A DNA stretch of 64,000 bases from NCBI RefSeq assembly GCF_001194135.2, contig NC_069001.1:8273725-8337724 (forward strand), written 5' to 3'. The position numbers and the translations under genes were made by a program. Below the pieces are notes generated by a model that was not told where the DNA came from, did no database searches, and saw only the letters and a list, made by a program, of their open reading frames with translations. This DNA comes from Octopus bimaculoides (lineage: Eukaryota). Shown piece after piece: positions 15,966-52,954 of the stretch. Numbering within the stretch: the first letter of the stretch is position 1; the number at the start of each line of letters is the position of its first letter.

Positions 15966-16273
15966 ACAGAGAGACTTGATATGAGTATAAATTGGCAAGA
16001 AAGATTGAAATGTGGGTGTTAAACATCCCAAACTTTATTCGTATTATTATTTTTTATGTTTGTTTTTCATGTGGGTTGGATAGGTTTTTCCCCATTCCAG
16101 TACAACATTTTGCCTCTTGTGTTCATCTTTTGTCATCATCTTGATGAGGTCCAGCTTCTTGAGATCTGTCTTCATCAGTCTTCTTATTTACCATCTTCCA
16201 CAGATTCTTTCTTCCAGTTATGTATATATGCTTATACACACGCACACACACACACACACATTTGTACATACCT

Positions 16274-16456
16274 CTTTTACTTTTTTACTTGTTTCAGTCA
16301 TTTGACTGCGGCCATGCTGGAGCACTGCCTTCAGTCGAGCAAATAGGCCCCAGGACTTATTCTTTGGAAGCCTAGTACTTATTCTAAGTTACGGGGACGT
16401 AAACACACCACCATCAGTTGTCAAGCGATGCTGGTGGGACAAACACAAACACACAC

Positions 16457-16491
<35 letters not shown>

Positions 16492-16706
16492 CGACAGGCT
16501 TCTTTCAGTTTCCATCTACCAAATTCACTCACAAGGCTTTGGTCGGCCCGAAGCTATAGTAGAAGACACTTGCNNNNNNNNNNCAAGGCTTTGGTCGGCC
16601 CGAAGCTATAGTAGAAGACACTTGCTCAAGGTGCCACGCAGTGGGAATGAACCCAGAACCATGTGGTTGGTAAGCAAGCTACTTACCACACAGCCACTCC
16701 TACACC
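16274..16706 (-). mobile_element. SINE family 1 copy (young; spans a 10-N gap)
   Basis: cagtcatttgactgcggccatgctggagcactgcc...acgacaggcttctttcagtttccatctacc..gaagacacttgctcaaggtgccacgcagtggg; CpGs retained. Confidence 0.85.
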
Positions 16707-17224
16707 TATATAAATATAAAATTTCGATATATATATATACATATAATCTCAAAATACAAAAACTAATTATAGTAAATTGCAATTTATTCTTACTTCAGGT
16801 CATAATGTTTATAGGATAATAGTGAATAAAGAAGTAACATAAATTAAATATATTATGGTGAGAAAAGAAAAAGAAAGTTGTGCAGTTAACAATTTTCAAA
16901 TTATTTTTACTAGAAATGAACAATCAAGTGATGGTTTATTCTTATGGATTAAGAAAGAATTTTTGATCCTATATCTAGATACATTTTAGGTTCTCATTAA
17001 AACACAGCTATCATAATAATTATTATTTCTGACTTGTTATGTTACTGTGTTTCAGTCAGTCCGACAAACTAGATTACTTCCAGTTAATTAGACCCCATTG
17101 TTATCAAAATGATTTAGGCTTGCACTTATATAAGAATTCTTTAAACTGACTGAAATTCCAAGAATTCCTTTTATATTTTATTGTTGCATTCAGGGAATGT
17201 TTTCATTTAACTCAGGCTAAAGCT

Positions 17225-18827: not shown

Positions 18828-18896
<69 letters not shown>

Positions 18897-18984
18897 TTTT
18901 CGGACAAAACCTTTTGTAACCTTCATCCTGTCTTTGTCCTTACATGTTTTTAATTGATATTAGCCCTTGTAGCCAATAAAACAA

Positions 18985-19029
<45 letters not shown>

Positions 19030-19052
19030 TATTATTATTATTATTATTATTA
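18828..19052. repeat. Trinucleotide microsatellites: (ATT)n at 18828-18893, then back-to-back (AAT)n(ATT)n at 18987-19052
   Basis: Directly visible. Confidence 0.9.
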
Positions 19053-25164: not shown

Positions 25165-25472
25165 CAGTGGCCAGAGCAGTCAGAGTTTACACCAAAGACG
25201 TCAGCTACTGACAGGATCCTGGCTCTTCATATACTCATTGAACAGCAGCAGGGTTTTCAGCGGAGGCTTCTTGCAGCTTATGGCAATGTCTGCCGGGGTG
25301 TTTGACTCAGTGGGCTGGGATGTGCTCTGGAGGATTCTGGAGCTGCAAGGTATACCTCACTGACTTGTTGGGTTGATGACAGTCTTGTATACTAGAACAG
25401 TGAATACAGTTCAGATTGGGGGTTCAGCATTTGACTTTTTCCCAGTTAGATGTGGGGCCCCATCAGGATTTG
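25165..25472 (+). mobile_element. RTE-clade LINE reverse transcriptase fragment
   Basis: PEQSEFTPKTSATDRILALHILIEQQQGFQRRLLAAY..[frameshift]..VFDSVGWDVLWRILELQGIP*LVGLMTVLY..DFFPVRCG. Follows the RT order Q-x-GF..ST.D.I / AAYVDxxKAFDSV / GVRQG. One frameshift and one stop. Confidence 0.85.
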
Positions 25473-26769
25473 AAATCAGAATGTAAGGAGCCAAAATAAA
25501 TACTGTGAAGCATTTCATCCAACATTCTAATATCTCTGATGGTTTGCTATTGGTTGTGTGTGTTTTTCTATATTTTCCCAGTAGTTTTCTTCATCCTTTT
25601 GAGGAAGTCCATCTTGCATTGCTGATTTTTGCTTATTCATGGTCTGGCCACTGTACAGTGTGACCTGTCTGTCCACATTTTTTATTACTATCTTGGAGAG
25701 TTTTTGTGATGATTCTCTTCTTAAGACTTCATTTATATTATAAGATGTTCATTTACAATATGATCATGTTAAGATATTTTCAGGATTTCATTAGGTCGAC
25801 TGGTTTTATTGCCTAAATTTGGGTAGATAGTTGTTAAGTACTTTTTTTCTTTTGACCTACCTTACTTAATATTAGATTACATACTTAAGATCTTGGATTA
25901 TTATTATTATTTTTTTATTGTTATTGCTTGTCTTCCCGCCCCTTTCTCCATACTCTCCATCTCTTGCTCTAGCCATACACCCTTGCAATCCTCTCATCCC
26001 TATCCAACCACACCCCTAATTCCTCTTCCCCCATTCACTTTGACTCACTTTGTGCCTTGAGGGGGGCCACCTGGACACCTCATCACCACTATTTATCACT
26101 TTGCAGTTTCTCCTGATCAATCACATCTCTTCTTATCCCTTTAGCATTCAAATTATTCTGTCAAATGTAACGTTTATTTATTCACACTGCTTTGGATTAA
26201 TTGCAAATTGTCTCATAGTTTTGATATTTCAATGCTACGATTATTTATTTTTAGAATGACAATGTAGGGTAGATGTAAGAGGCTGGACCTGTCCAGTTGG
26301 AACAATAAGAAAAACAAAAGATAGAATATTTGGGCCAGATATTGTTGGTTTGAATGCCTAAGGGTAAAATGTGAGTGACTATGTAGCTCCTTTATAACAG
26401 GAAACTGTTCTTCCTCCTTCTTTCATGCTTTAACCTCCTCATCTCCTAACATAAAGATGAGCCTTCCCTCCCCCTCAGGGTTTCATAGTCTTGCAAGCTA
26501 TATGGCAAAAACTTATTAATGCTGATGACATGAAAATCCAGTACACATTGTAAAGTGGCTGGCATTAGGAAGGGCAAACAACTGTAGAAACCATGCCAAA
26601 GCAGACATTGGAGTGCAATTTTGTCCTTGGATCCATCAAATTGTGTCAAATCATCCAGTCCATGCCAGCATGAACCATGGACATTATAACCATTGGTTCC
26701 ATCCATAATAGTTTAGTGGTGGGATGATTGCTGTAAGTGAATTTAGACATTAGTGCACTGTTGAGGATA

Positions 26770-28030
26770 TTGTTGTTGCTGTTTATAACAGCTTAGTTCT
26801 GACCCAGCAGACTTACGTTCAAATATGTTCCAGTTGTGATTAATCCTTCTATTATTCAGTTATTGTGTATCCAAAGTATCTTTCCTATTGTTGTTTAACT
26901 CTTGGCCAATTCTAATACAACAGACTTATGATCAAAGACATTCCCACCATGATCATCCATCCTTTCTTTTATTCTGATGGTATTTCTTAAACTATATTAT
27001 CCAAGATATCCTTCTTCTTTGTTGTTTTGCTTCAGATTAGCTTTGTGACCAGAGCATTCCAGCTATGACCACACCATCTTATTTTTAGACTATGTATCCA
27101 GGACTATATTTTAAAATGTTTTCCCCTTTTTTTTTTTACAATGGTAGGGTGTGATTTGAATGAGATATACCTGATATTGCTAGCAGGTCAAATAGTAGTG
27201 GTTGTTGTTTCGCTCTTTGTCCTGTTTGAGTAAATCTATGGTAAAAAGTGTTCGAACTATGACCATCCCGTCTTTTGTCCATGCAATGTAGTTAAAAAGA
27301 CTACATTATCCATGGTTTTATTTTTTTTATTTTGAAAACTGCATTCTATTCTGTTTAGCTTACACGTCTGGTTCTTTACTAATTGTTACGCTTAGTAGTC
27401 TAACAACTACTATAGCTACAGCTATTACTGCTACTACTTCTACTCTTGTTGCAGTTGTATTTGTTCTCTAAAGCATGTTAAAAATGTTTTTATACATTAC
27501 AACATACTAACTTGTAACTGTCTATCAGTATTTGTGCACACATACAAAAATAATACAATACGACTAAATCATCATAATTTGCAGGACAATGGAATGTCAA
27601 TGGAATGTAGCTATATCGCTGGTGAAATCTCTTTCTATAAACTCGATCTCTAAAACTTCCTTCACATATTAGTCGTAAATCTTTTGTACAGATAACAATA
27701 CAAATGAACATGAAGACAGGATGTCATAGGAGAATGCTCCGCTGGACATCCTGGAGTGTTAAGTAACACAGCTTAAACTAATAGGCCAACACTTAGCAGG
27801 AATAAAATTTTAATTGGTGGATGGGTAGGTGGATGGGCTTATTTTCAATTCTAGATTACATTCTGCTTACCTTTTAAAATACATGGTTGTTGTTTAGCCA
27901 CAAATAAACCATGGTTGAGCACACCTATGATCAAGCCAGCCAGCTGTGAGCATTCTGTATTTTTTGGGTGTGATTTGAAAGAGATTTGGTTGATATTTCT
28001 AGCAGGTTGAACAACAACATGGTGGTTAAC
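26770..28030. repeat. Cluster of about five copies of an old abundant dispersed repeat (gttgttgtttagccccaggtcag...ggtagggtgtgatttgagggagatttggctgctatttctagcagg)
   Basis: Copies start near 26770, 26890, 27020, 27200 and 27885. About 22 decayed copies are recognisable by eye across the window. Confidence 0.65.
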
Positions 28031-29533
28031 TTGTTTGCTCTCTTTCTTTTATTGGCTAAATAATAAAATTGTGTTTATATAGGAATGTAAGTATGCCACT
28101 CATCATCTTAATTTTAACATCTGTTTATCTTACAAGTCAGAAGTGTAGCACATCATCACTTGATCCTGTGTCATCACCTATGCAAGATTCAACAGTCTGA
28201 GATCTGATCTCCTCATTTCTTCCAGTGCCTTGCTTGGTTTTTCTCTGGTGTGTTTCACTGTCAACATGCAAACCCACCACTGCCTATTCACATCATCATC
28301 ATCTGACATTCGTTTTTCCATGCTGGCATGGGTTAGATGGTTTGACTGGAGCTGGTAAGCTGGAGAGCTGCACCAGACAGTCTGTTTTGCCTTGGTTTCT
28401 ACGGCCGAATGCCCTTCCTAATGCCAACCACTCCATAGAGTGTACTGGATGCTTTTAATGTGTCACTGGCATGGGTACCTCTCTCTTCCCCTATATTGAC
28501 TGATGTCTTTAAAGCTCTGATACATTCATTTTTCAAACAAGGCACTGTTAATCTTTTTGATACCAACCTGCCTGAGACTACCTGTAGTTCTATGATACAA
28601 ACTTCTTGTTTGAAAGTGATCTAAATTAAAACCTGTGATCAAACTCCTTATCAATTTATGTTCCAACAACAACACTATTATGACATTACACATGAACCAC
28701 TTACACATTAATTTAATGAGATTAACATTTCGTTGATTGAACAACTTAATATGCATTGTTGAAACCAATGGAGGCTCCATTATATATATATATACACACT
28801 GCTGAGTGGTTGTGTTAGGAAGGGTATCCAGCTGTAAAAATCCTGCCAAAACAGTCACAGAAGTTTGGCGCAGACTTCTGCCTGACCGGCTCTTGTAGTA
28901 CCGCCCTGCCCATGCTAGCATGGAACATGAATGTTAAATGAGGATGATGATGATGACAGTGTATTTCAATAGAAATATGGTGAAAAGGAGTTAAACACTT
29001 AAGGGATTCATTTGCCCTATGTCTTGCTTCATTTCCCTCGTATCTTCACTTATTTTCCATATTCACTGTCCATGTTTCACTATTATGTAGTACCATGCTT
29101 CTAATAAATACTTTATATAATCTATCATCTGCTGTATTCACAAATCTTCCACATTCAATGTCCATACCCTATTACCATGTTGCATCACAGTCCTTACACC
29201 TACTTAGTGCAGTCAGCACTGTACATGTATAAACTTGATTGAATGTCTGTGTTGATTTTTTAGCCCCAGGTAAACCCTGACTGGGCAATAACACATGATC
29301 AAAAGCAGTTCAACTTTGACTGTTCAGTTTTTTTAAGATATCTTGTATTACAATGCATAACATGTCTTGTTTTGAAAGATGTTAGCATGTTGGGTGAGAT
29401 TTGGCTGGTGTTTCCAGCAGTTTAAGCAAACATGTAGAACTGCCTCAATGGTTTAGTCTGTAGCATTAGCTTGAGCGTGTGCATGTGTCTGTGTATAGAT
29501 AGTCACTGTAACGAATTAGTTAAATTCCAATTG

Positions 29534-29580
<47 letters not shown>

Positions 29581-30092
29581 NNNNNNNNNNNNNNNNNNNN
29601 NNNNNNNNNNNNNNNNNNNNNNNNNNNNNNNNNNNNNNNNNNNNNNNNNNNNNNNNNNNNNNNNNNNNNNNNNNNNNNNNNNNNNNNNNNNNNNNNNNNN
29701 NNNNNNNNNNNNNNNNNNNNNNNNNNNNNNNNNNNNNNNNNNNNNNNNNNNNNNNNNNNNNNNNNNNNNNNNNNNNNNNNNNNNNNNNNNNNNNNNNNNN
29801 NNNNNNNNNNNNNNNNNNNNNNNNNNNNNNNNNNNNNNNNNNNNNNNNNNNNNNNNNNNNNNNNNNNNNNNNNNNNNNNNNNNNNNNNNNNNNNNNNNNN
29901 NNNNNNNNNNNNNNNNNNNNNNNNNNNNNNNNNNNNNNNNNNNNNNNNNNNNNNNNNNNNNNNNNNNNNNNNNNNNNNNNNNNNNNNNNNNNNNNNNNNN
30001 NNNNNNNNNNNNNNNNNNNNNNNNNNNNNNNNNNNNNNNNNNNNNNNNNNNNNNNNNNNNNNNNNNNNNNNNNNNNNNNNNNNNNNNNNNNN

Positions 30093-30137
<45 letters not shown>

Positions 30138-30611
30138 TTCAGCTGTTTTATCAGCTGATGGATAGTTTTATTGTGAGAAGTGTACAAACATTGGTGAACA
30201 CGACCTAGATAATAACAAAAACAATAATAGTAATAATATAAACAACAGCAATTATCACCATCACCAATGTCCTCCATCCTATCTCCATTTTTTTGGGTTC
30301 CATTACCAGGGCTTACATTAAGTCATAATTAGTGGGTTTTATTGTGCCATTGTTTTCATTTTCTAAAGGGAAGCAAAATACAAGAAATAAATGGTCTATT
30401 TTTAAAGTTTTCATTACAACAACTATTTCCACTATTTCCACAAGAATCTAACCTATGAGTCTGTTGTTTCCTGTGTTCTCTGGTATTCAGGTTGGATGAA
30501 AGTAGCCTTGAATCTTCTGAGAAGATAGGAAGTTAAACGACCACCATAACTACCAGCTGGTACTCACTTGTAGCATGTACCATTATGAGAATATATAAAT
30601 ACTTCATATAG

Positions 30612-30910
30612 AGGCATGGGTGTATGGTTAAGAAACTCAATTTGCAACCAAGCGGTTTTAGGTTCAATCCCACTTAGTTGTCACTTGTACAGAAGCTTGT
30701 TGTTTGTGTGTGTCTTTGGGTTTGTGTTTGTCCTGCCATCATCATTTGACTACCAGTGTCGGTTTGTTTATATTCCCTTAGTGGTTTGGCAAAAGAAATC
30801 AATAGCATAAGTACCAGGCTTAAAAAATAACTACTAGGTTTGCTTTGTTTGACTAAATCCTTCAAGGTAGTACTCCAGCCTGACCACAGTCCAATGACTT
30901 AAGTAAAAAG
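30612..30910 (+). mobile_element. SINE family 1 copy, internally deleted
   Basis: gaggcatgggtgtatggttaagaaac..ggttcaatccc, then the tail gtaccaggcttaaaaaataactactagg..ccacagtccaatgact. Confidence 0.65.
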
Positions 30911-31636
30911 ATAGAGATGTGTGTGTGTGTGTGTGTGGACACAGGCACAGTTGAATGGTTAAGAAGTTTACTTTGCAATCTTGAGGTTCCAGGTTCAGTT
31001 CCACTATGTGGTTGTCTTTATCATGGCTTCAGGTGACCCTAAGCTTTGTGAGTGAAATTGGGTAAACAAAAACTATATGAAAACTTGCCAAATTCAAAGG
31101 TCCATCCCTCTTGTATATTGTGTCAGGCTGATTTGGATTGTACTGAACCACTTACACATTAATTTAATGAGATGAACATTTTGTTGATTGAACAACTTAA
31201 TATGCATTGTTGAAACCAATGGAGGCTCCATTATAAATATATATATATATATATATCTTTATATATATATATATATAGGAGAGTATTGTAGTTCTCTTGA
31301 AGCATTGTGTATTGTTTGTAAAGAATAAAAAGTATCGAATGGTACGACAATGCACTATAATACAAAAAGTGGACTATATGCCTGTTGTAATTTAGTTATC
31401 TATAGTCCGATTATGATATAAACAACAGCAATTAGCACCATCGCCAATGGTTCAGTCTGTAGCATTAGCTTGAGCGTGTGCATGTGTCTGTGTATAGATA
31501 GTGACTGTAATGAATTAGTTAAATTCCTATTGCCCTATATAGATATATAGATATATATAGATAACTAAATTACAACAGGTATGTAGTCCATTTTTTGTAT
31601 TACAATGCATTGTTGTACCATTCAAAACTTTTTATT

Positions 31637-31685
<49 letters not shown>

Positions 31686-31689
31686 TATA

Positions 31690-31725
31690 TACGAGGGGGT
31701 GCTGAAAAGTTCTTAGCTTTAAGGG
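31690..31725 (+). mobile_element. Isolated mariner-type terminus fragment
   Basis: TA|CGAGGGGGTGCTGAAAAGTTC directly after a (TA)n run resembles mariner TACGAGGG termini. No partner end found. Confidence 0.4.
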
Positions 31726-31948: not shown

Positions 31949-33862
31949 CTATATATGTGTGTGTGTATGTGTGTGTGTGTGTATCAAATATAGTAAAGCT
32001 TGAATATTGTGTATGTTATTATTTAATCACAGGTCGGCTCTGATCCTGCAGACCTACAATCTCATTCCTGCCATGACCATCTCATCTGTTATTTAGGCAA
32101 TATATGTAGGGCTACATCATCTAATGGCTCTCATTATTTTTATGGAAAATAGTAGTGTATGATATGAGGGTCATTTCTTGCAGACCAAGCACGGCTATGT
32201 AGATACTACATTTATGGCTCTATGATGTTGTTGATGATAATGATGATGACATTGACTAATTGGTATAAAAATGATCCACAAATGCCTGAATCAAACTTAA
32301 GTAAACTGAAGCATCCGGATTGATGATAAATAAATTTGACCGAGTGAAATAGCATATTAGTTTAAGTGTGAAATAAATCCTGTTTAGTTGAGTGTGAAAG
32401 TATTCCTGGACTGAGAGTGATTTTATTTTTTAATTTTTATTTCTTCTGTCTTAAGCAGCTTTCCAAATACCTTGGTCTTACTTCCATCATTACATGATAT
32501 GAAATAACTGCTTTATCACTCCAGTGGATTTAATCTTCCTTAATCCATCTCCCCTTCCTTCTAGCTTAAAAGCTATGCTTTCATCCTCTCACTCACAGCA
32601 CTGTGTGTGGTAAGAGAGATGGTTTGTATATATATATGTGTGTGCTTGTTGTGTCAGGTGGGCAGAAATGGAGGAACCAAGAGATTGATATTATCATCAT
32701 CATCATCATTATTAATGCAGCAAGCTGGCAGTATCATTAGTGTGCTGGACGAAATGCTTAGTGGTATTTTGCCAGTCACTACGCTTTGAGTTCAAATTCC
32801 ACTGAGGTTGACTTTGCCTTTCATCCTTTCTGGGTCCATAAATTAAGTACCAGTTGGACACTGGAGTTGATGTAATTGACACATGCCTCCCTCAAAATGG
32901 CTGCCCCTGTGTCAAAATTTGAAACCATTAGTATTATTTACATTATTTACAATTGACGGATATTTGTCCTCAACTTGTTTGTTGTTAACACGTTTCGGCT
33001 GATATACCCTCCCTGGGGGTAGTTGAAATTTCCAAGGGAGTGTTGAAGAAAAGTGAGGTGATAATGGGGTAGCTATTCATGTAAAAACAACAAAGTAATG
33101 GGTTCATTAGGTTAAATTTTATTTGTGAAATACATTTGCATTGAATTTGCTTCAGAAAGAGGTCTCTGTTTGTGATGGTTAGTTGGGGTTGCAGCACTAG
33201 GAATTTGGCCTGGGTGTGAAGGCGGCAGCTGCTCGAAAAAGGTTGGGAACCACTGACGTAGAACGATAGAACAGTAGTGCATGAATTTGTTCAGTGTCCA
33301 AGCATTGTTTTCTTGTGGAGTTATGTCAGCCAGCTGCTGTATTATGTGGAATGGATCTAGCTATCAGCTGTGCCCATTTCAATGATTTCCTTGCCACTTG
33401 CTTTTAATTGGGCAGAGAAGGCAGTTTCCTTTCTGTTTGGTGGCTTCAGCAAAAGAGGATGTGCGGTGGATGAGGTTGAAATGAACGAAGGCAGAAACTT
33501 TCCTCTTTGGTGAAGTTAAACTTGAAAAGGAAGGCGAGGCACTACTTTCCTCTAGTGAACTTAATGAAATGTGGGTGAGAGTGGTAAAAAAAGAGCACTC
33601 TAAGTAGAAGCCTGTACATCAGAGAACAACAACTAGAGAGTGCACTTACTCTTGGTGTTCAAAGAAATCTGGGGTTGTGGGGTTCTTCAGTCGGCCTTAA
33701 AGCTCTTCCTGTATCAGGAAGATTGCATTATCATTTTTCCTCATTTTTTAATTTCCATTTAATGTCCACTTTTCCAAGCTTGCATGGGCCATTTTCTTAA
33801 TGTTGTATACCATGTGTATTTATATTTTATGACTTATATATATATATATATATATTTTATGA

Positions 33863-36515: not shown

Positions 36516-36549
<34 letters not shown>

Positions 36550-39715: not shown

Positions 39716-40072
39716 ACTGGCTGTGTGGTAAGAAACTTGCTTCCCAACCACATAGTTCCAGGTTCAGTCCTACTGTGTGGTACCTTGAGCGAGTGTTTTC
39801 TACTGTATCCTTGGACTAACCAAAGCCTTGTAAGTGGATTTGGTAGATGGAAACTGAAAGAAGTCCATTGTATATAGACATACATACATATATATATGTA
39901 TGTATGTGTATCTATGTGTATATGTCTTTCTGTCTGCTTGTTCCACCCCCCTGTTTGACAACTGGTGTTGGTGTGTTTGCATTCCTGTAACTTAGCAGTT
40001 CGGCACAAGTGACCAATGGAATATGTACCAGGCTTAAAAAATAAGTACTGGGGTTGATTCATTCAAGTAAAA
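39716..40072 (+). mobile_element. SINE family 1 copy
   Basis: ggctgtgtggtaagaaacttgcttcccaaccacatagttccaggttcagtcc...gtaccaggcttaaaaaataagtactggggttgattc. Confidence 0.8.
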
Positions 40073-41404: not shown

Positions 41405-41945
41405 TCCTTGTTAATGTAATTTATCTAGTTAATTACTTAGTCCTTGTTAATATCGTTTGGCTAGCTCTCTCTCTTGTTAATGCTATTTGGCTAACTTTCC
41501 CTTGTTGATATTATTTGGTTAAGTTAAGGCAGTGAGCTAACAGAAAAGGTTAGCACGCCGGGTGAAAAGGTTTAGCGGTATTTCGTCTGTCTTCATGTTC
41601 TGAGTTCAAATTCTGCCAAGGTCAACTTTGCCTTTCATCTTTTCGGGGTTGATAAATTAAGTACCAGTTGTGTACTGGGTCGATCTAATCGACTGGTTCT
41701 CTCCCCCCAAAATTTTGGGCCTTGTGCCTAGAATAGAAAAGATTATTTGGTTAAGCTTTCTTTATGCCATTTCACTAACTAAGCTTTATTGAAGTTATTT
41801 GGCTAGCTATCCCTTGTTAAAGTCATTTGACTAACTAAGCTTTTTTAATGACATTTGCTTTATTAGTGTCATTTGTCTAACAGAGCTTCTTTAATTCCAG
41901 TTGGCTAAATAAACCTTGTTAATTCCATTTGACCAACAAAGCTTT
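41405..41945. repeat. Degenerate roughly 30-bp minisatellite (cttgttaat..atttggctaact..) interrupted by a SINE
   Basis: Recurrent cttgttaa / atttggcta / atttgactaac motifs on both sides of the SINE at 41524-41741; similar motifs at 40900-41050. Confidence 0.6.
41524..41741 (+). mobile_element. tRNA-type SINE, near full length, with 14-bp target-site duplication
   Basis: aaggcagtgagctaacagaa..gttagcacgccgggtgaaa..gttctgagttcaaattc (B-box-like)..gtaccagttg..ccttgtgcctagaatagaaaag. Flanked by the exact repeat attatttggttaag at 41510-41523 and 41742-41755. Related copies at 32720-32925, 43719-43843, 44220-44385 (-) and 18730-18828 (-). Confidence 0.8.
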
Positions 41946-43000: not shown

Positions 43001-46000
43001 ATGGAGGGAATTCAGATAACATATACACCAGTAAGACAGGCTGCTGTGTTGTATGTATACAGCTGTAAGACTTTGGTGTATTCACATGCGTGTGCACGCA
43101 CACACACACATGCACACAATGTACACACACACCCACATGCATACATAAAGTCACATCTGTAAGACTATATATGTCTATGTTTGTGTATAAATAGCATAAA
43201 ATAATTTTTAACAGTAGAGAATTCAATACAAAGATGTAGCATCTATGAATTTTATCAAATGCTTGAATAAACATATGTGTGTGTGTGTGTGTGCAATAGG
43301 GTTTCACACAGTTTTTATCTGACAAATGGACTCACAAGGTATTGATCAACCTGCAGCTATAATATAAGACACTTGCTTAATGTACCACATAGTGGGACTG
43401 GACCTCACACTTGCTGTGCCTGAGTCTCTCTCTCTCTCTCTCTCTCTCTGTTTCTTTGTTTTGACATCACTGGTGCTGGTGTCATATAAAAAGTACCCAA
43501 TATACTTGTAAAGTGGTTGGCATTAGGAAGGGCATCCAGCTGTTGGAACCATGTCAAAGCAGACATTGCAGCTTGGTACTGTCCTTTGACTCGCCAGCTC
43601 CTTTCAAACTGTCACACACCTCTTTTCTGTTGGTATTTTGATACTGCTGGCATAACATCTAATGTGTTAAAGTCCTCATACTGTCATGCTTGTAGATTAT
43701 TCTTAATATAAGTCAGAGTAAGGCAGTGAGTTGGTGGAATCATTACTGTGTCGAACAAAATGCCTGGGGTATTTCCTCTGACTTATTACATTCTGAGTTC
43801 AAATTCCAATAGGATTAACTTTATCCCTCTGGAGTCAATAAACAAAGACACGTGTCTTTGTTTGTCTTCCCACCACAGTTTGGGACAATTTGAGTCATAA
43901 GTTTGCAGCATCACAGCTGACTTCAGACTAAACAATAACTCATTTATGCAATCCTTCCAACCCATCCTCAAGCTCCTTGAAACTCTTACAACATTTTTTT
44001 TTTTTTATATTTCTTTATTCTGCAAACATAAACTGCAATAACCTCACTAATTTCAGCTGACCTAGAAAAGACACATGCCACCACTCCTGTCTCTGACTAA
44101 ATAACACTTTTTGATCTGGGCACAAACACTGCAATGGGACGTGNNNNNNNNNNNNNNNNNNNNNNNNNNNNNNNNNNNNNNNNNNNNNNNNNNNNNNNNN
44201 NNNNNNNNNNNNNNNNNGAGTAAGTTAATTTCATTGACTCCAATATTTGACTGGTACTTCAGTTTATTGACTCCAGAGGGATAAAGTTAATCCTATTGGA
44301 ATTTGAACTCAGAATGTAATAAGTCAGAAGAAATACCCCAGGCATTTTGTTCGACACAGTAATGATTCCACCAACACACTGCCTTACTCTGACTTATATT
44401 AAGAATAATCTACAAGCATGACATTTTGGTTGGCCTGAGGCCATAGTAGAAAACACTTGCCCAAGGTGTCATGCAGTGGAACTGAACCCCCGAACCATAT
44501 GATTGGGAAGCAAGCTTCTCACCACATGGCCATGGTCAGTTCAGATTCAGATTATAAAAGGCATTCAAGCCCTCTTTTTCTTCAATGTCTAAAACCATAT
44601 TATCCAACACGGCAGTTCTTTTTCAAGATGGTAGGGTGTGATCTGAGGGAGATTAAAGCTATTATTTCTTGAGTATTGAGTGACCACTTTGTTGGCTCAG
44701 GAATAATTCTGTATTAAAATAGAAGTTTGGTGGTTGGGACAATAAGAATGATGACTGAATGAAAGGTATTTATACTGGATGGGTTTGGGAAGTTGTGGTA
44801 CCTAGTCTTATATTGGTGAGTGGATCTTTGACAATAATCAGGGGTGCAGGGCATAGCTTTTGCAGTGCAGATTTAGCAATGCTGTATAAAATCTTCCTTT
44901 GGATCCAAATTCAGTTTCTAGTTACAAACTTTATTTTGTGACTAATTGTGTGCATGCACATGCATGTGTATGTGCATGCATGCATGCAACTGTGTTAAAT
45001 CCATAAGTCAGACAACGGCCACCACAAAATGTAGTTTGTCTCAGATTATACAGGATACATATGATGCCTGCAGTGTAGAACACTACTCCTATCATAGCTC
45101 AGTCTATGTTAATCTCAACAGATGCACATGTAATATTCAGTTGCAGTGGACTTTGACCTCGGGTTCCAAGAGATTTTTAGAAGCAGGTTTTATTTCACTG
45201 AGGATTTGATGTCTACCATAGTCTCAAAGTAAGTGGAACTGTGAGTGAAAACAGGTTGCATGCAATCCATAATGTAAAGTGAATGATAAAAGGAATGACT
45301 TCCCATTTGTGTATGTGTGTGTGTGGGGGGACCCACATGGTTTTTACAATCCTCACAATATGCAACCCAACTGAGAGAATAGTACCACCAAATGGTAGTT
45401 CTACCACAGAAAACCTCTCTAGTGTCAACAGTATGATAAAAAAAAAAAAAAGCATTCAATCCACTTTTTAAGGTGGTTGGTGACAGAAAAGGCATCCAGT
45501 TGTAAAAACAATACCAAAATTTTGACATGCACAAGAAAGACGGTTTGGTTTTTTTCTGTTTATGTGTGTGCCAGATGACACCACTCTGATGAATAATGAG
45601 ATGCTGACATCTGTCCAACCCATGCTAGCATAGAAAGACATGTAAAGATGATGATAATGATGATGACAAAACTGTGTAGAAGCCCTTCAGAAGGTTTCCA
45701 TCTGTTGAGTGGTAGACTTAATTCACTGCTAGGTTTGATCCTGTTACCTAGTCTTTGGGTGCCTTTAGTGGAATGCACTATGTTGCCATCATTCAACTGA
45801 AGACTCTAGTTTGAGGATATGTAATTTGCTGTCTTTATCCACTGTTTCCTACTAAGTGTTGCATTTTCTTTCGTCCTCCTGTCTTTACCCTACCCTCATC
45901 AATCTCAGAAGACCTACAAAAAAGCCATGGGTATTGTCCCTTCATCCTCTATTTAAGACCTAAAATAAATAAAAAGGGCCTCCAGTACCTCCTACATGGT

Positions 46001-52222: not shown

Positions 52223-52954
52223 GTATGCTTTTTAATAGCTTTATTATTATTGTTGTTGTTGTTGTTATTGTTATTATTATCATTATTATTTTTATTATTA
52301 TTATTATTTCCTGAGCACATTATTTATCTCCTGTCTAATATTTTAGAAAACTTTTAACCCTTTGGCATTCAGATTTCTCTGTCAAATGTAATGCTTATTT
52401 ATTTTACATTGTTTTGAATTAATTACACAGCCTCTTTAACTTTAAGATTTTGATGGTGTAATTGTTTATTTTTATACTGACATTGTCAGTAAGATATACA
52501 TGAGAAACTGAATCCAGCTGGCTTGAACGTAAAATATTCATAAAATATTTTGGTTAGATATGGGCTGATTTAAATGCTAAAGGGTTAAAAATAGTTGTTA
52601 TTCACAAACTCTGCTGTAATGTTGCTAGGGTTCAAATCTTGGATGAACAGACAAAATTAACAAAAAGCATTCTAATCACGACCATCCAATCTTTTTAAGG
52701 TTGGTAGAATGTGAATTGATTGAGATTTGGTTGTGATTTCTAGCAAGACAAGCAACCACATAATGATCTTTATTAGCAATGTGGAGAAGGTGTCTTCCTG
52801 TGTTTTCTTGGCAGTTTTCACACCAACCACACCACTGCCATCATCATCACCATGTGTAAACTGTATATACTACAAATGATGAATTTTATGTATATACAAC
52901 TACTGGAGTGAAATGGTATTGCTATCGTCTTCCAAAGGACATCCAATATGACAT

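What the first reader, a model, noticed from the sequence alone, without database searches (positions are those of the whole stretch)
31144..31641. Patchwork of short segments copied from 1-2.5 kb upstream, joined by microhomology and enclosed in an inverted repeat
Seen: (A') 31144-31235 copies 28693-28784 with 2 mismatches in about 92 bp. (C') 31416-31449 copies 30236-30269 with 2 mismatches. (B') 31445-31540 copies 29446-29540 with 4 mismatches. C' and B' are joined out of their genomic order at a shared 5-mer caatg, present at the end of C and the start of B. C'+B' sit inside an 86-bp inverted repeat (31319-31404 / 31556-31641, 8 mismatches, 7 of them transitions), and segments are often bounded by (TA)n runs. 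Inference: serial template switching (MMBIR/FoSTeS or Pol-theta-type templated insertion), or a foldback/MITE-like element capturing neighbouring host DNA in a Pack-like way, possibly using TA microsatellites as switch points. In pre-mRNA the arms would form an ADAR-suitable stem. This is the most unusual structure in the window.
Basis: partly seen in the sequence, partly recalled or inferred. Interest (0 to 1): 0.7.

Follow-up and report, generated by a model that had tools for sequence, protein, structure and literature searches.

The report
Patchwork insertion copied from nearby DNA
A 500-base stretch of non-coding animal DNA is stitched together from short copies of sequences lying 1.2-2.5 kb upstream, most likely a scar of error-prone break or replication repair at fragile (TA)n repeats; it is real in this sequence but belongs to a known kind of event.

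Summary
A' (31144-31235), C' (31413-31449) and B' (31445-31539) copy 28693-28784, 30233-30269 and 29446-29540. They have 2, 3 and 4 mismatches and sharp borders. C' and B' are joined out of order over a shared CAATG. An 86-nt inverted repeat (8 mismatches, 7 transitions) encloses C'+B'. None of these pieces has another copy in the 64 kb.

New points:
- Donors A and B each end at a (TA)n run, and A' and B' each sit just 5' of a TA(-like) run.
- The right arm carries a 16-mer from 29343-29358 (3 of 2000 shuffles reach it).
- Several mismatches are CpG decay, so the copies are aged paralogues, not assembler duplicates.
- The arms are not tails of the two flanking SINEs.

Best reading: breaks at TA runs were repaired by copying synthesis primed in other TA runs, with template switches at microhomology (MMBIR/SDSA type).

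A MITE that captured host DNA is weakly disfavoured, because A' lies outside the arms and one arm carries local sequence. The stem would be ADAR-suitable, but transcription is unknown and the mismatches show no strand bias.

I could not test contiguity in reads, copy number across the genome, the empty site, or the content of gap 29581-30092. This is a new member of a known kind, of modest interest.

The parts
28693..28784 (+). Donor A. It is followed directly by (TA)6-7 at 28781-28794 and then a SINE copy at 28793-28956.
29343..29358 (+). Candidate donor D, the 16-mer TTGTATTACAATGCAT, 88 nt upstream of B.
29446..29540 (+). Donor B. It is followed directly by (TA)22+ at 29537-29580, which runs into the gap.
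29581..30092 (.). Assembly gap of 512 N with pure (TA)n on both edges, lying between donors B and C. Its content is unknown. It may be one long TA run, or it may hide the source of the arm and of U1.
30233..30269 (+). Donor C, ending in CCAATG, 97 nt right of the TA run 30093-30135.
31144..31235 (+). Copy A' (2 mismatches in 92). The left junction at 31143/31144 has no microhomology. The right side runs into a TA run.
31236..31279 (.). Interrupted TA run, (TA)n CTT (TA)n, between A' and U1.
31280..31318 (+). U1, 39 nt with no detectable source in the visible window.
31319..31404 (+). Left arm of the inverted repeat, the reverse complement of R. It keeps two CpGs that R has lost. It differs from donor D at two sites where R matches D.
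31405..31412 (+). U2, 8 nt (GTCCGATT) between the left arm and C'. TATAGTCC at 31401-31408, which straddles the arm/U2 border, is the reverse complement of 31371-31378.
31413..31449 (+). Copy C' (3 mismatches in 37). Its last 5 nt, CAATG, are shared with B'.
31445..31539 (+). Copy B' (4 mismatches in 95).
31536..31563 (.). TA-like run (TATATAGA x 2.8) where donor B has pure (TA)n. It overlaps the inner 8 nt of the right arm.
31556..31641 (+). Right arm R. It contains the 16-mer D' at 31595-31610. Abutting D' are an 11-mer shared with A (31605-31615 = 28751-28761) and a 10-mer (31587-31596 = 30284-30293, not significant on its own).
31640..31691 (.). (TA)26 run closing the patch on the right.

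Best explanation
The patch 31144-31641 is a fossil of error-prone copying repair at TA-microsatellite fragile sites. It may record one event or a few.

Inferred sequence of events:
1. A break or collapsed fork occurred at a TA(-like) run.
2. This exposed a 3' end made of TA repeats, which paired with another TA run 1.2-2.5 kb away on the sister or the same chromatid.
3. DNA synthesis then copied the sequence immediately 5' of that donor run.
4. In one case it copied B leftwards to its CAATG. It then dissociated, re-annealed at the CAATG ending C, copied 37 more nt, and was end-joined.
5. In the other case it copied A and was end-joined at 31143/31144.

Because (TA)n is its own reverse complement, the same priming can run in inverted orientation. 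That offers a route to the 86-nt inverted repeat, in which the left arm is an inverted copy of R. R itself seems partly built from short local pieces.

Shown by the sequence: the copies, their borders, the CAATG overlap, the TA adjacency, and the post-copy ageing.
Inferred: the break sites, the direction and order of synthesis, the number of events, and the enzymes involved.

The result is a non-coding 323-nt hairpin-forming element with no demonstrated function.
For: - Three high-identity local copies with sharp borders, and none elsewhere in the 64 kb.
- All copies are in direct orientation. They are compact in the patch (about 400 nt) but spread over 1.6 kb of otherwise unique donor DNA, so the copying ran from donor to patch.
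- C'/B' are joined over a 5-nt microhomology.
- A and B end exactly at TA runs. A', B' and R are each followed by a TA(-like) run, and homology continues 10 to 24 nt into those runs.
- The C'-before-B' order is what leftward synthesis from a TA run followed by one switch predicts.
- The 16-mer from 29343-29358 inside R is reached by only 3 of 2000 shuffles. An abutting 11-mer shared with A is reached by 52 of 3000.
- Mismatches include CpG/TpG or CpG/CpA differences in A/A', B/B', C/C' and both arms, with derived states on both arms. The copies therefore aged in the genome.
- TA runs of 40-59 nt are crossed inside contigs elsewhere in this window. The joins across 31236-31279 and 31640-31691 are therefore within the assembler's reach.
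- Multi-template insertions of mixed orientation joined at 2-12 nt microhomology are documented as human germline variants (PMC8421209, read).
- AT/TA repeats are cruciform-forming fragile sites (PMC12972899, abstract).
- Template switching is a documented way to create hairpins in one step (PMC5453318 and PMC8794818, abstracts).
Against: - No read-level or cross-species evidence is available. The empty site, contiguity and genome-wide copy number are all untested.
- The left junction of A' has no microhomology.
- U1 (39 nt), U2 (8 nt) and most of the arms have no visible template.
- U1 sits between the TA run and the left arm, which the simplest inverted TA-priming model does not predict.
- Arm divergence (9.3%) is nominally higher than that of A'+B'+C' (4.0%; Fisher p = 0.09). 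This hints at more than one event.
- No second example of a copied TA-run flank was found in the window.
- The TA association is a post hoc observation in a genome with about one TA run per 1.2 kb.
Confidence: 0.55

Rival explanations
1. Two-stage history. An older inverted duplication first made a near-perfect palindrome with a short TA-like centre. Later the palindrome centre and the neighbouring TA run broke, and the breaks were filled with templated DNA (C'+B', and A'). The mechanism is the same as in the best explanation, but with separate events and a pre-existing hairpin as the fragile site.
For: - The arms differ by 9.3%, against 4.0% for A'+B'+C' and 2.2% for A' alone (A+B vs IR p = 0.04; ABC vs IR p = 0.09).
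- Without the cargo, the spacer would be about 8 nt plus a TATAGA-type run. That would be an unstable palindrome.
- Palindrome fragility is well documented (PMC3855049, abstract).
Against: - The four-group heterogeneity test is not significant (p = 0.16), and the counts are tiny.
- R carries local donor sequence that matches its source 16/16. This argues that R is not much older than the other copies.
Confidence: 0.2
2. A foldback or MITE-like transposon (31319-31641) inserted here and acquired neighbouring host DNA between its terminal inverted repeats (Pack-type capture). A' would then be an unrelated event.
For: - 86-nt terminal inverted repeats at 91% identity, total length 323 nt, and TA dinucleotides at both ends that could be a TA target-site duplication.
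- Tc1/mariner-type elements are present in the window (DDE_3 ORF at 4828-5658).
- MITEs are annotated in octopus genomes (PMC13282606).
Against: - There is no other copy of the arm in 64 kb.
- The TA 'duplication' is self-complementary and merges with a (TA)26 run, so it carries no information.
- A', from the same donor region, lies outside the arms.
- R contains a significant 16-mer from the donor region.
- The cargo borders coincide with TA-like sequence and microhomology rather than with the inner ends of the repeats.
Confidence: 0.08
3. Assembly artefact. The TA-bounded block 31280-31641 (about 360 nt) is a small contig placed wrongly, for example belonging in the TA-bounded 512-N gap between B and C. 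Alternatively the joins across TA runs are chimeric.
For: - This is a draft assembly with 12 gaps in 64 kb, most of them at microsatellites.
- A 42-nt exact duplicate straddles the 10-N gap at 16574-16583, so artefacts do exist here.
- The block and the gap are both TA-flanked and of compatible size.
Against: - The copies differ from the donors by 2-8%, with CpG-decay changes, so they are distinct genomic sequences.
- A' is continuous with unique upstream sequence. The left arm, U2, C', B' and R are continuous without any pure repeat between them.
- The two TA runs crossed (44 nt interrupted, 52 nt) are no longer than other runs crossed inside contigs.
- Even if the block were relocated into the gap, the C'|B' junction and the inverted repeat would remain a complex local rearrangement.
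Confidence: 0.1
4. A, B, C and the arms are fragments of dispersed repeat families, for example microsatellite-associated retroelement ends. Their co-occurrence would reflect nested insertions or a decayed segmental duplication, not templated repair.
For: - The window is SINE-rich, and these SINEs carry internal (TA)n(TG)n microsatellites.
- Families of microsatellite flanks spread by retroelements are known in other invertebrates (PMC2887409, abstract).
Against: - None of the pieces has a further copy in 64 kb, whereas the SINE families have 5-10 each.
- The arms show no significant similarity to five SINE tails in the window.
- Three donors within 1.6 kb and three copies within 0.4 kb, 1.2-2.5 kb apart, at 92-98% identity is not what independent insertions give. 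SINE copies in this window are 69-84% alike.
- The A', C', B' order does not fit a collinear duplication followed by deletions.
Confidence: 0.07

Closest known systems
MMBIR/FoSTeS-type complex templated insertions (MMB-TI; chromoanasynthesis at small scale)
   Same: - Several templates from nearby DNA, in both orientations, in scrambled order.
- Junction microhomology of a few nt.
- Such events occur as fixed or germline variants in non-coding DNA (PMC8421209: events with 3 templates, microhomology mostly 2-12 nt).
   Different: - The templates here are 1.2-2.5 kb away and 37-119 nt long, whereas the cited survey only searched within 100 nt.
- Two of the junctions lie in long TA-repeat homology rather than in microhomology.
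- One junction is blunt.
- Nothing is known about the pathway in this organism.
Short-range template-switch mutations that create hairpins (Loytynoja and Goldman four-point model)
   Same: One replication error copies the reverse complement of neighbouring sequence and creates an inverted repeat in a single step (PMC5453318 and PMC8794818, abstracts).
   Different: As I know them, those events are typically tens of nt long and replace sequence in place. Here the arm is 86 nt, lies 151 nt from its partner, and is combined with direct-orientation copies from kilobases away.
Polymerase-theta end joining with templated insertions
   Same: Microhomology-primed synthesis with dissociation and re-annealing, leaving inserts copied from flanking DNA. 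It shapes natural variation in nematodes (PMC4490562 and PMC7165422, abstracts).
   Different: From my own knowledge, such inserts are usually 3-30 nt and templated within about 100 nt of the break. The 8-nt U2 with its local inverted 8-mer fits that scale; the large pieces do not.
Pack-MULE / Pack-type MITE gene-fragment capture, and filler DNA in abortive gap repair of DNA transposons
   Same: Host fragments sit between terminal inverted repeats, and patchwork filler is joined at microhomology.
   Different: - No evidence that the arms belong to a transposon family.
- One captured piece lies outside the arms.
- An arm contains local sequence.
- No informative target-site duplication.
AT/TA-repeat and palindrome fragile sites (FRA16D Flex1, PATRR)
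   Same: Long (TA)n runs and long AT-rich inverted repeats form cruciforms, break, and are healed with rearrangement (PMC12972899 and PMC3855049, abstracts).
   Different: Those systems are known for deletions and translocations. Copying of TA-run flanks into another TA run, as proposed here, is my inference and not a described outcome in the papers I read.

Membership tests
Complex templated insertion (MMBIR/FoSTeS/SDSA with template switching) | Every inserted segment has an identifiable template elsewhere, usually nearby | tested here: inconclusive
   A', B', C' and a 16-mer in R have templates 1.2-2.5 kb upstream. U1, U2 and most of the arm sequence have none in the visible window. The 512-N gap inside the donor region could hide them.
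Complex templated insertion (MMBIR/FoSTeS/SDSA with template switching) | Microhomology or homeology at the junctions | tested here: inconclusive
   C'/B' share 5 nt, CAATG. The right junctions of A' and B' lie inside TA-repeat homology. The left junction of A' has 0 nt, and the left junction of C' is unclear.
Complex templated insertion (MMBIR/FoSTeS/SDSA with template switching) | Derived state: an empty site exists in alleles or relatives | not testable with these tools
   No genome of this or a related species could be reached. Searches were all empty. The SINE-based proxy for the empty site was uninformative because the flanking SINE is too decayed.
MITE / foldback transposon | Terminal inverted repeats and small size | tested here: met
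   86-nt arms at 91% identity; the element is 323 nt.
MITE / foldback transposon | Target-site duplication flanking the repeats | tested here: inconclusive
   Only TA/TA is possible. It is palindromic, lies inside the repeat and is continuous with (TA)26. No longer direct repeat flanks the arms.
MITE / foldback transposon | Multiple dispersed copies | tested here: not met
   There is no other copy of either arm in the 64-kb window. This is a weak test, and the genome-wide test could not be run.
Pack-type capture | All captured host fragments lie between the terminal repeats | tested here: not met
   C'+B' are inside. A', from the same donor region, ends 84 nt outside the left arm.
Two convergent SINE insertions forming the arms | The arms align to the SINE family consensus | tested here: not met
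   Smith-Waterman alignment of both arms against five SINE tails from the window gave no significant alignment in the expected orientation.
ADAR-edited dsRNA structure | Long, nearly perfect intramolecular duplex | tested here: met
   The + strand folds at -149.5 kcal/mol (z = -16.6) and the - strand at -133.4 kcal/mol (z = -15.8).
ADAR-edited dsRNA structure | The locus is transcribed and shows A-to-G differences in RNA | not testable with these tools
   No RNA data and no gene model are available. There is no Rfam hit in the window. The genomic mismatches show no strand bias (4 G.U against 3 A.C on the + strand).

The most novel reading that the evidence does not exclude
In this TA-microsatellite-rich genome, self-complementary (TA)n runs might act systematically as ectopic priming sites. 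Broken TA runs would invade other TA runs in either orientation and copy their flanks. This process would disperse microsatellite-flanking DNA, scramble it by secondary switches, and build long hairpins de novo (raw material for dsRNA, ADAR or small-RNA substrates) without any transposon. This locus would be the first dissected example.
Probability: 0.1. Interest if true: 0.55.

Novelty: new member of a known kind. Interest (0 to 1): 0.3.

Why it matters
If the assembly is correct, the locus is a clean, datable natural example of multi-template repair synthesis in a mollusc-like, repeat-rich genome. It suggests a concrete role for TA microsatellites as both the breaking point and the homology used for ectopic priming. 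That idea can be tested genome-wide: look for TA-run flanks duplicated next to other TA runs, in direct and inverted orientation. It also shows how an 86-bp hairpin can arise from local sequence without a transposon. On present evidence it is a single non-coding event with no sign of function, and its mechanism class is already well described in other organisms.

Tried and rejected
1. Independent assemblies of the locus. Exact-protein look-ups of ORFs spanning A, the A' junction and a transposase found nothing. A 260-aa composite of stop-free translations covering every junction of the patch gave no hit at E <= 10 in 5.8 billion proteins. The 24-mer shared by both arms is absent from the metagenome and prokaryote genome collections. 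No outside evidence could be obtained.

2. Organism identification. The Tc1-like ORF gave a best hit of 69% identity and no informative names. The SINE anatomy resembles what I remember of octopus SINEs, but that is memory only.

3. Arms as two convergent SINE tails. A + SINE head lies at 30943-31091 and a - SINE at 31960-31696. I rejected this: there is no significant similarity to five window tails.

4. Using the decayed + SINE as a proxy for the empty site of A'. This was uninformative because the SINE is too diverged beyond about 31091.

5. Gapped search for templates of U1, U2 and the arms in 28000-31143. Only the 16-mer was found.

6. A second example of copied TA-run flanks in the window. 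None was found. The high-scoring pairs are (TG)n and (TATG)n low complexity.

7. Transition excess as a sign of editing or RIP-like mutation. P = 0.2 against a 2:1 transition bias, and part of it is CpG decay.

8. CAATG/CATTG occurs 7 times in the patch against 1.4 expected. The sites are not independent, because some are copied or mirrored, so I treat this as a curiosity.

Full report
**Setting.** The window is AT-rich (about 64% A+T), non-coding-looking animal DNA.
- It has 12 N-gaps, most of them at microsatellites.
- It holds many copies of two or three SINE families and a decayed Tc1-like transposase ORF.
- Rfam and tRNA scans are empty.
- ORFs across the region are short and low-complexity.
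- The organism could not be identified with the tools.

**Observation.** Every element of the finding was reproduced.

| Pair | Donor | Copy | Mismatches | blastn E (64-kb window) |
|---|---|---|---|---|
| A/A' | 28693-28784 | 31144-31235 | 2 of 92 (102 nt at 97% with the TA run) | 1e-43 |
| B/B' | 29446-29540 | 31445-31539 | 4 of 95 (119 nt at 94% with the TA-like tail) | 2e-47 |
| C/C' | 30233-30269 | 31413-31449 | 3 of 37 | 2e-8 |
| Arms | 31319-31404 | 31556-31641 | 8 of 86 (7 transitions) | 2e-28 |

- C' and B' overlap by CAATG.
- Identity collapses within a base or two at each non-TA border.
- None of the pieces recurs elsewhere in the window.

**New anatomical points.**

1. *TA runs.* Both large donors end exactly at a TA run: A at (TA)6-7, and B at (TA)22+ that runs into the 512-N gap.
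   - A', B' and the right arm R are each followed by a TA or TA-like run.
   - Homology continues 10-24 nt into those runs.
   - TA runs occupy 2.3% of positions. Two of six donor ends abutting one has P of about 0.008, post hoc.

2. *Arm R carries local sequence.* R carries the 16-mer TTGTATTACAATGCAT, identical to 29343-29358, 88 nt upstream of B.
   - Only 3 of 2000 dinucleotide shuffles of R reach a 16-mer against 28000-31100, and 38 of 2000 against the whole window.
   - Abutting it are an 11-mer shared with A (52 of 3000 shuffles) and a 10-mer from just right of C, which is not significant.
   - So the arm itself looks partly mosaic.

3. *Polarity of the arms.* At the two sites inside this 16-mer where the arms differ, R matches the donor. 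At two other sites the left arm keeps CpG where R has TpG or CpA. Both arms have therefore mutated since they were duplicated.

4. *Ageing of the copies.* CpG-to-TpG/CpA differences also separate A/A', B/B' and C/C'. The copies are aged paralogues, not assembler duplicates.

5. *No visible template for the rest.* U1 (31280-31318), U2 (31405-31412) and the remainder of the arms have no detectable template in the visible window.

6. *Divergence.* Values are 2.2% (A), 4.2% (B), 8.1% (C) and 9.3% (arms). Heterogeneity is not significant over four groups (p = 0.16) and borderline for A+B+C against the arms (p = 0.09).

**Mechanism.** The compact, scrambled copies against dispersed, otherwise unique donors set the direction of copying. 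The regularity 'donor immediately 5' of a TA run, copy immediately 5' of a TA run' suggests the following.
- A 3' end made of TA repeats, exposed by breakage or fork collapse in a TA run, paired with another TA run. It was then extended leftwards through the donor flank.
- For the inner insertion, synthesis copied B back to its CAATG. It switched to the CAATG at the end of C, copied 37 nt, and was end-joined, leaving U2.
- This explains without further assumptions why C' precedes B'.
- A' arose the same way from the TA run after A, with a blunt left junction.
- (TA)n is self-complementary, so inverted priming is equally possible. That offers a route to the inverted copy of R, although the 39-nt U1 between the TA run and the left arm is not predicted by the simplest version.
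- A circular or tandem intermediate of the B..C segment would give the same C|B junction without a switch. I cannot separate that variant.
- The number of events (one, or an older palindrome later filled at its centre) is open.

Published work supports the plausibility of each step:
- Multi-template insertions of mixed orientation at 2-12 nt microhomology occur as germline variants (PMC8421209).
- Template switching creates hairpins (PMC5453318 and PMC8794818).
- AT/TA repeats and palindromes are fragile (PMC12972899 and PMC3855049).

**Rivals.**
- *MITE or Pack-type capture.* It has long inverted repeats and small size in its favour. However, the TA 'duplication' is uninformative, no other arm copy exists in 64 kb, A' lies outside the arms, and R holds local sequence.
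- *Arms as two convergent SINE tails.* I tested this directly because a + SINE head (30943-31091) and a - SINE (31960-31696) flank the patch. There is no significant similarity to five tails in the window.
- *Dispersed-family origin of A, B and C.* This is unlikely given the absence of further copies while SINE families have 5-10 each, and 92-98% identity against 69-84% among SINE copies.
- *Misassembly.* This cannot be excluded. The block 31280-31641 is TA-bounded, like the 512-N gap between B and C, and the assembly shows a 42-nt duplicate across a 10-N gap. Against it: the copies are diverged, the critical junctions contain no pure repeat, and equally long TA runs are crossed inside contigs elsewhere.

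**RNA structure.** The arms fold into a nearly continuous 86-bp stem on either strand: -149.5 kcal/mol (z = -16.6) on the + strand and -133.4 (z = -15.8) on the - strand. As DNA the + strand folds at -79.7 (z = -15.0).
- The 7 transitions give 4 G.U and 3 A.C on the + strand, so there is no strand preference.
- 7 of 8 transitions is not unusual against a 2:1 transition bias (P = 0.2).
- The stem would suit ADAR if transcribed, but nothing here shows transcription.

**Limits.** All routes to outside sequence were empty. Contiguity in reads, genome-wide copy number, the empty site and the gap content therefore remain untested.

**Verdict.**
- The template-switching reading is supported and refined to TA-run-anchored copying.
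- The transposon-capture reading is disfavoured.
- This is a new member of a known kind.
- Interest is 0.3.

Noticed in passing
window 43677-43843 and 44262-44428: A second, younger inverted repeat with 167-nt arms at 98-99% identity. The spacer is 418 nt and includes a 74-N gap. The arm belongs to a dispersed SINE-like family whose other window copies are only 70-82% alike (32713-32815, 41577-41613, 25468-25503). The pair therefore looks like a local inverted duplication or conversion rather than two independent insertions. A perfect 24-nt palindrome (43840-43863, AAACAAAGACACGTGTCTTTGTTT) sits at the inner edge of the left arm.
   Followed up: partly
window 16532-16573 and 16584-16625: A 42-nt exact direct duplicate on either side of a 10-N gap (16574-16583), inside a SINE copy. 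It looks like an unmerged contig overlap, i.e. an assembly artefact.
   Followed up: no
window 4828-5658 (- strand): A 276-aa ORF with a weak DDE_3 match (E = 5e-5, below the Pfam cut-off). It has many Tc1/Tcb2-like transposase homologues of about 350 aa (best 69% identity). This is a 5'-truncated or decayed Tc1-like transposase.
   Followed up: partly
window 30612-30918, 39718-40059, 16243-16712 and others: The main SINE family has a tRNA-like head of about 170 nt, an internal (TA)n(TG)n microsatellite and a tail of about 200 nt. Many TA runs of this window are therefore SINE-internal.
   Followed up: partly
window 54825-55119: A tandem array with a 30-nt period at about 90-92% identity between shifted copies. 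It lies inside an ORF that reads as repeated FTILPMVIL units.
   Followed up: no
window 31144-31641: CAATG/CATTG occurs 7 times in the 498-nt patch against 1.4 expected from the window. ATGCATTGTTG is shared by A' and arm R, and GCATTGT also occurs in U1. The sites are partly non-independent because some are copied or mirrored.
   Followed up: partly
window 18828-19052, 36517-36547, 52265-52308, 57280-57326: Short-period (apparently 3-nt) simple repeats that match one another in both orientations across the window. This is low-complexity sequence and was not examined further.
   Followed up: no
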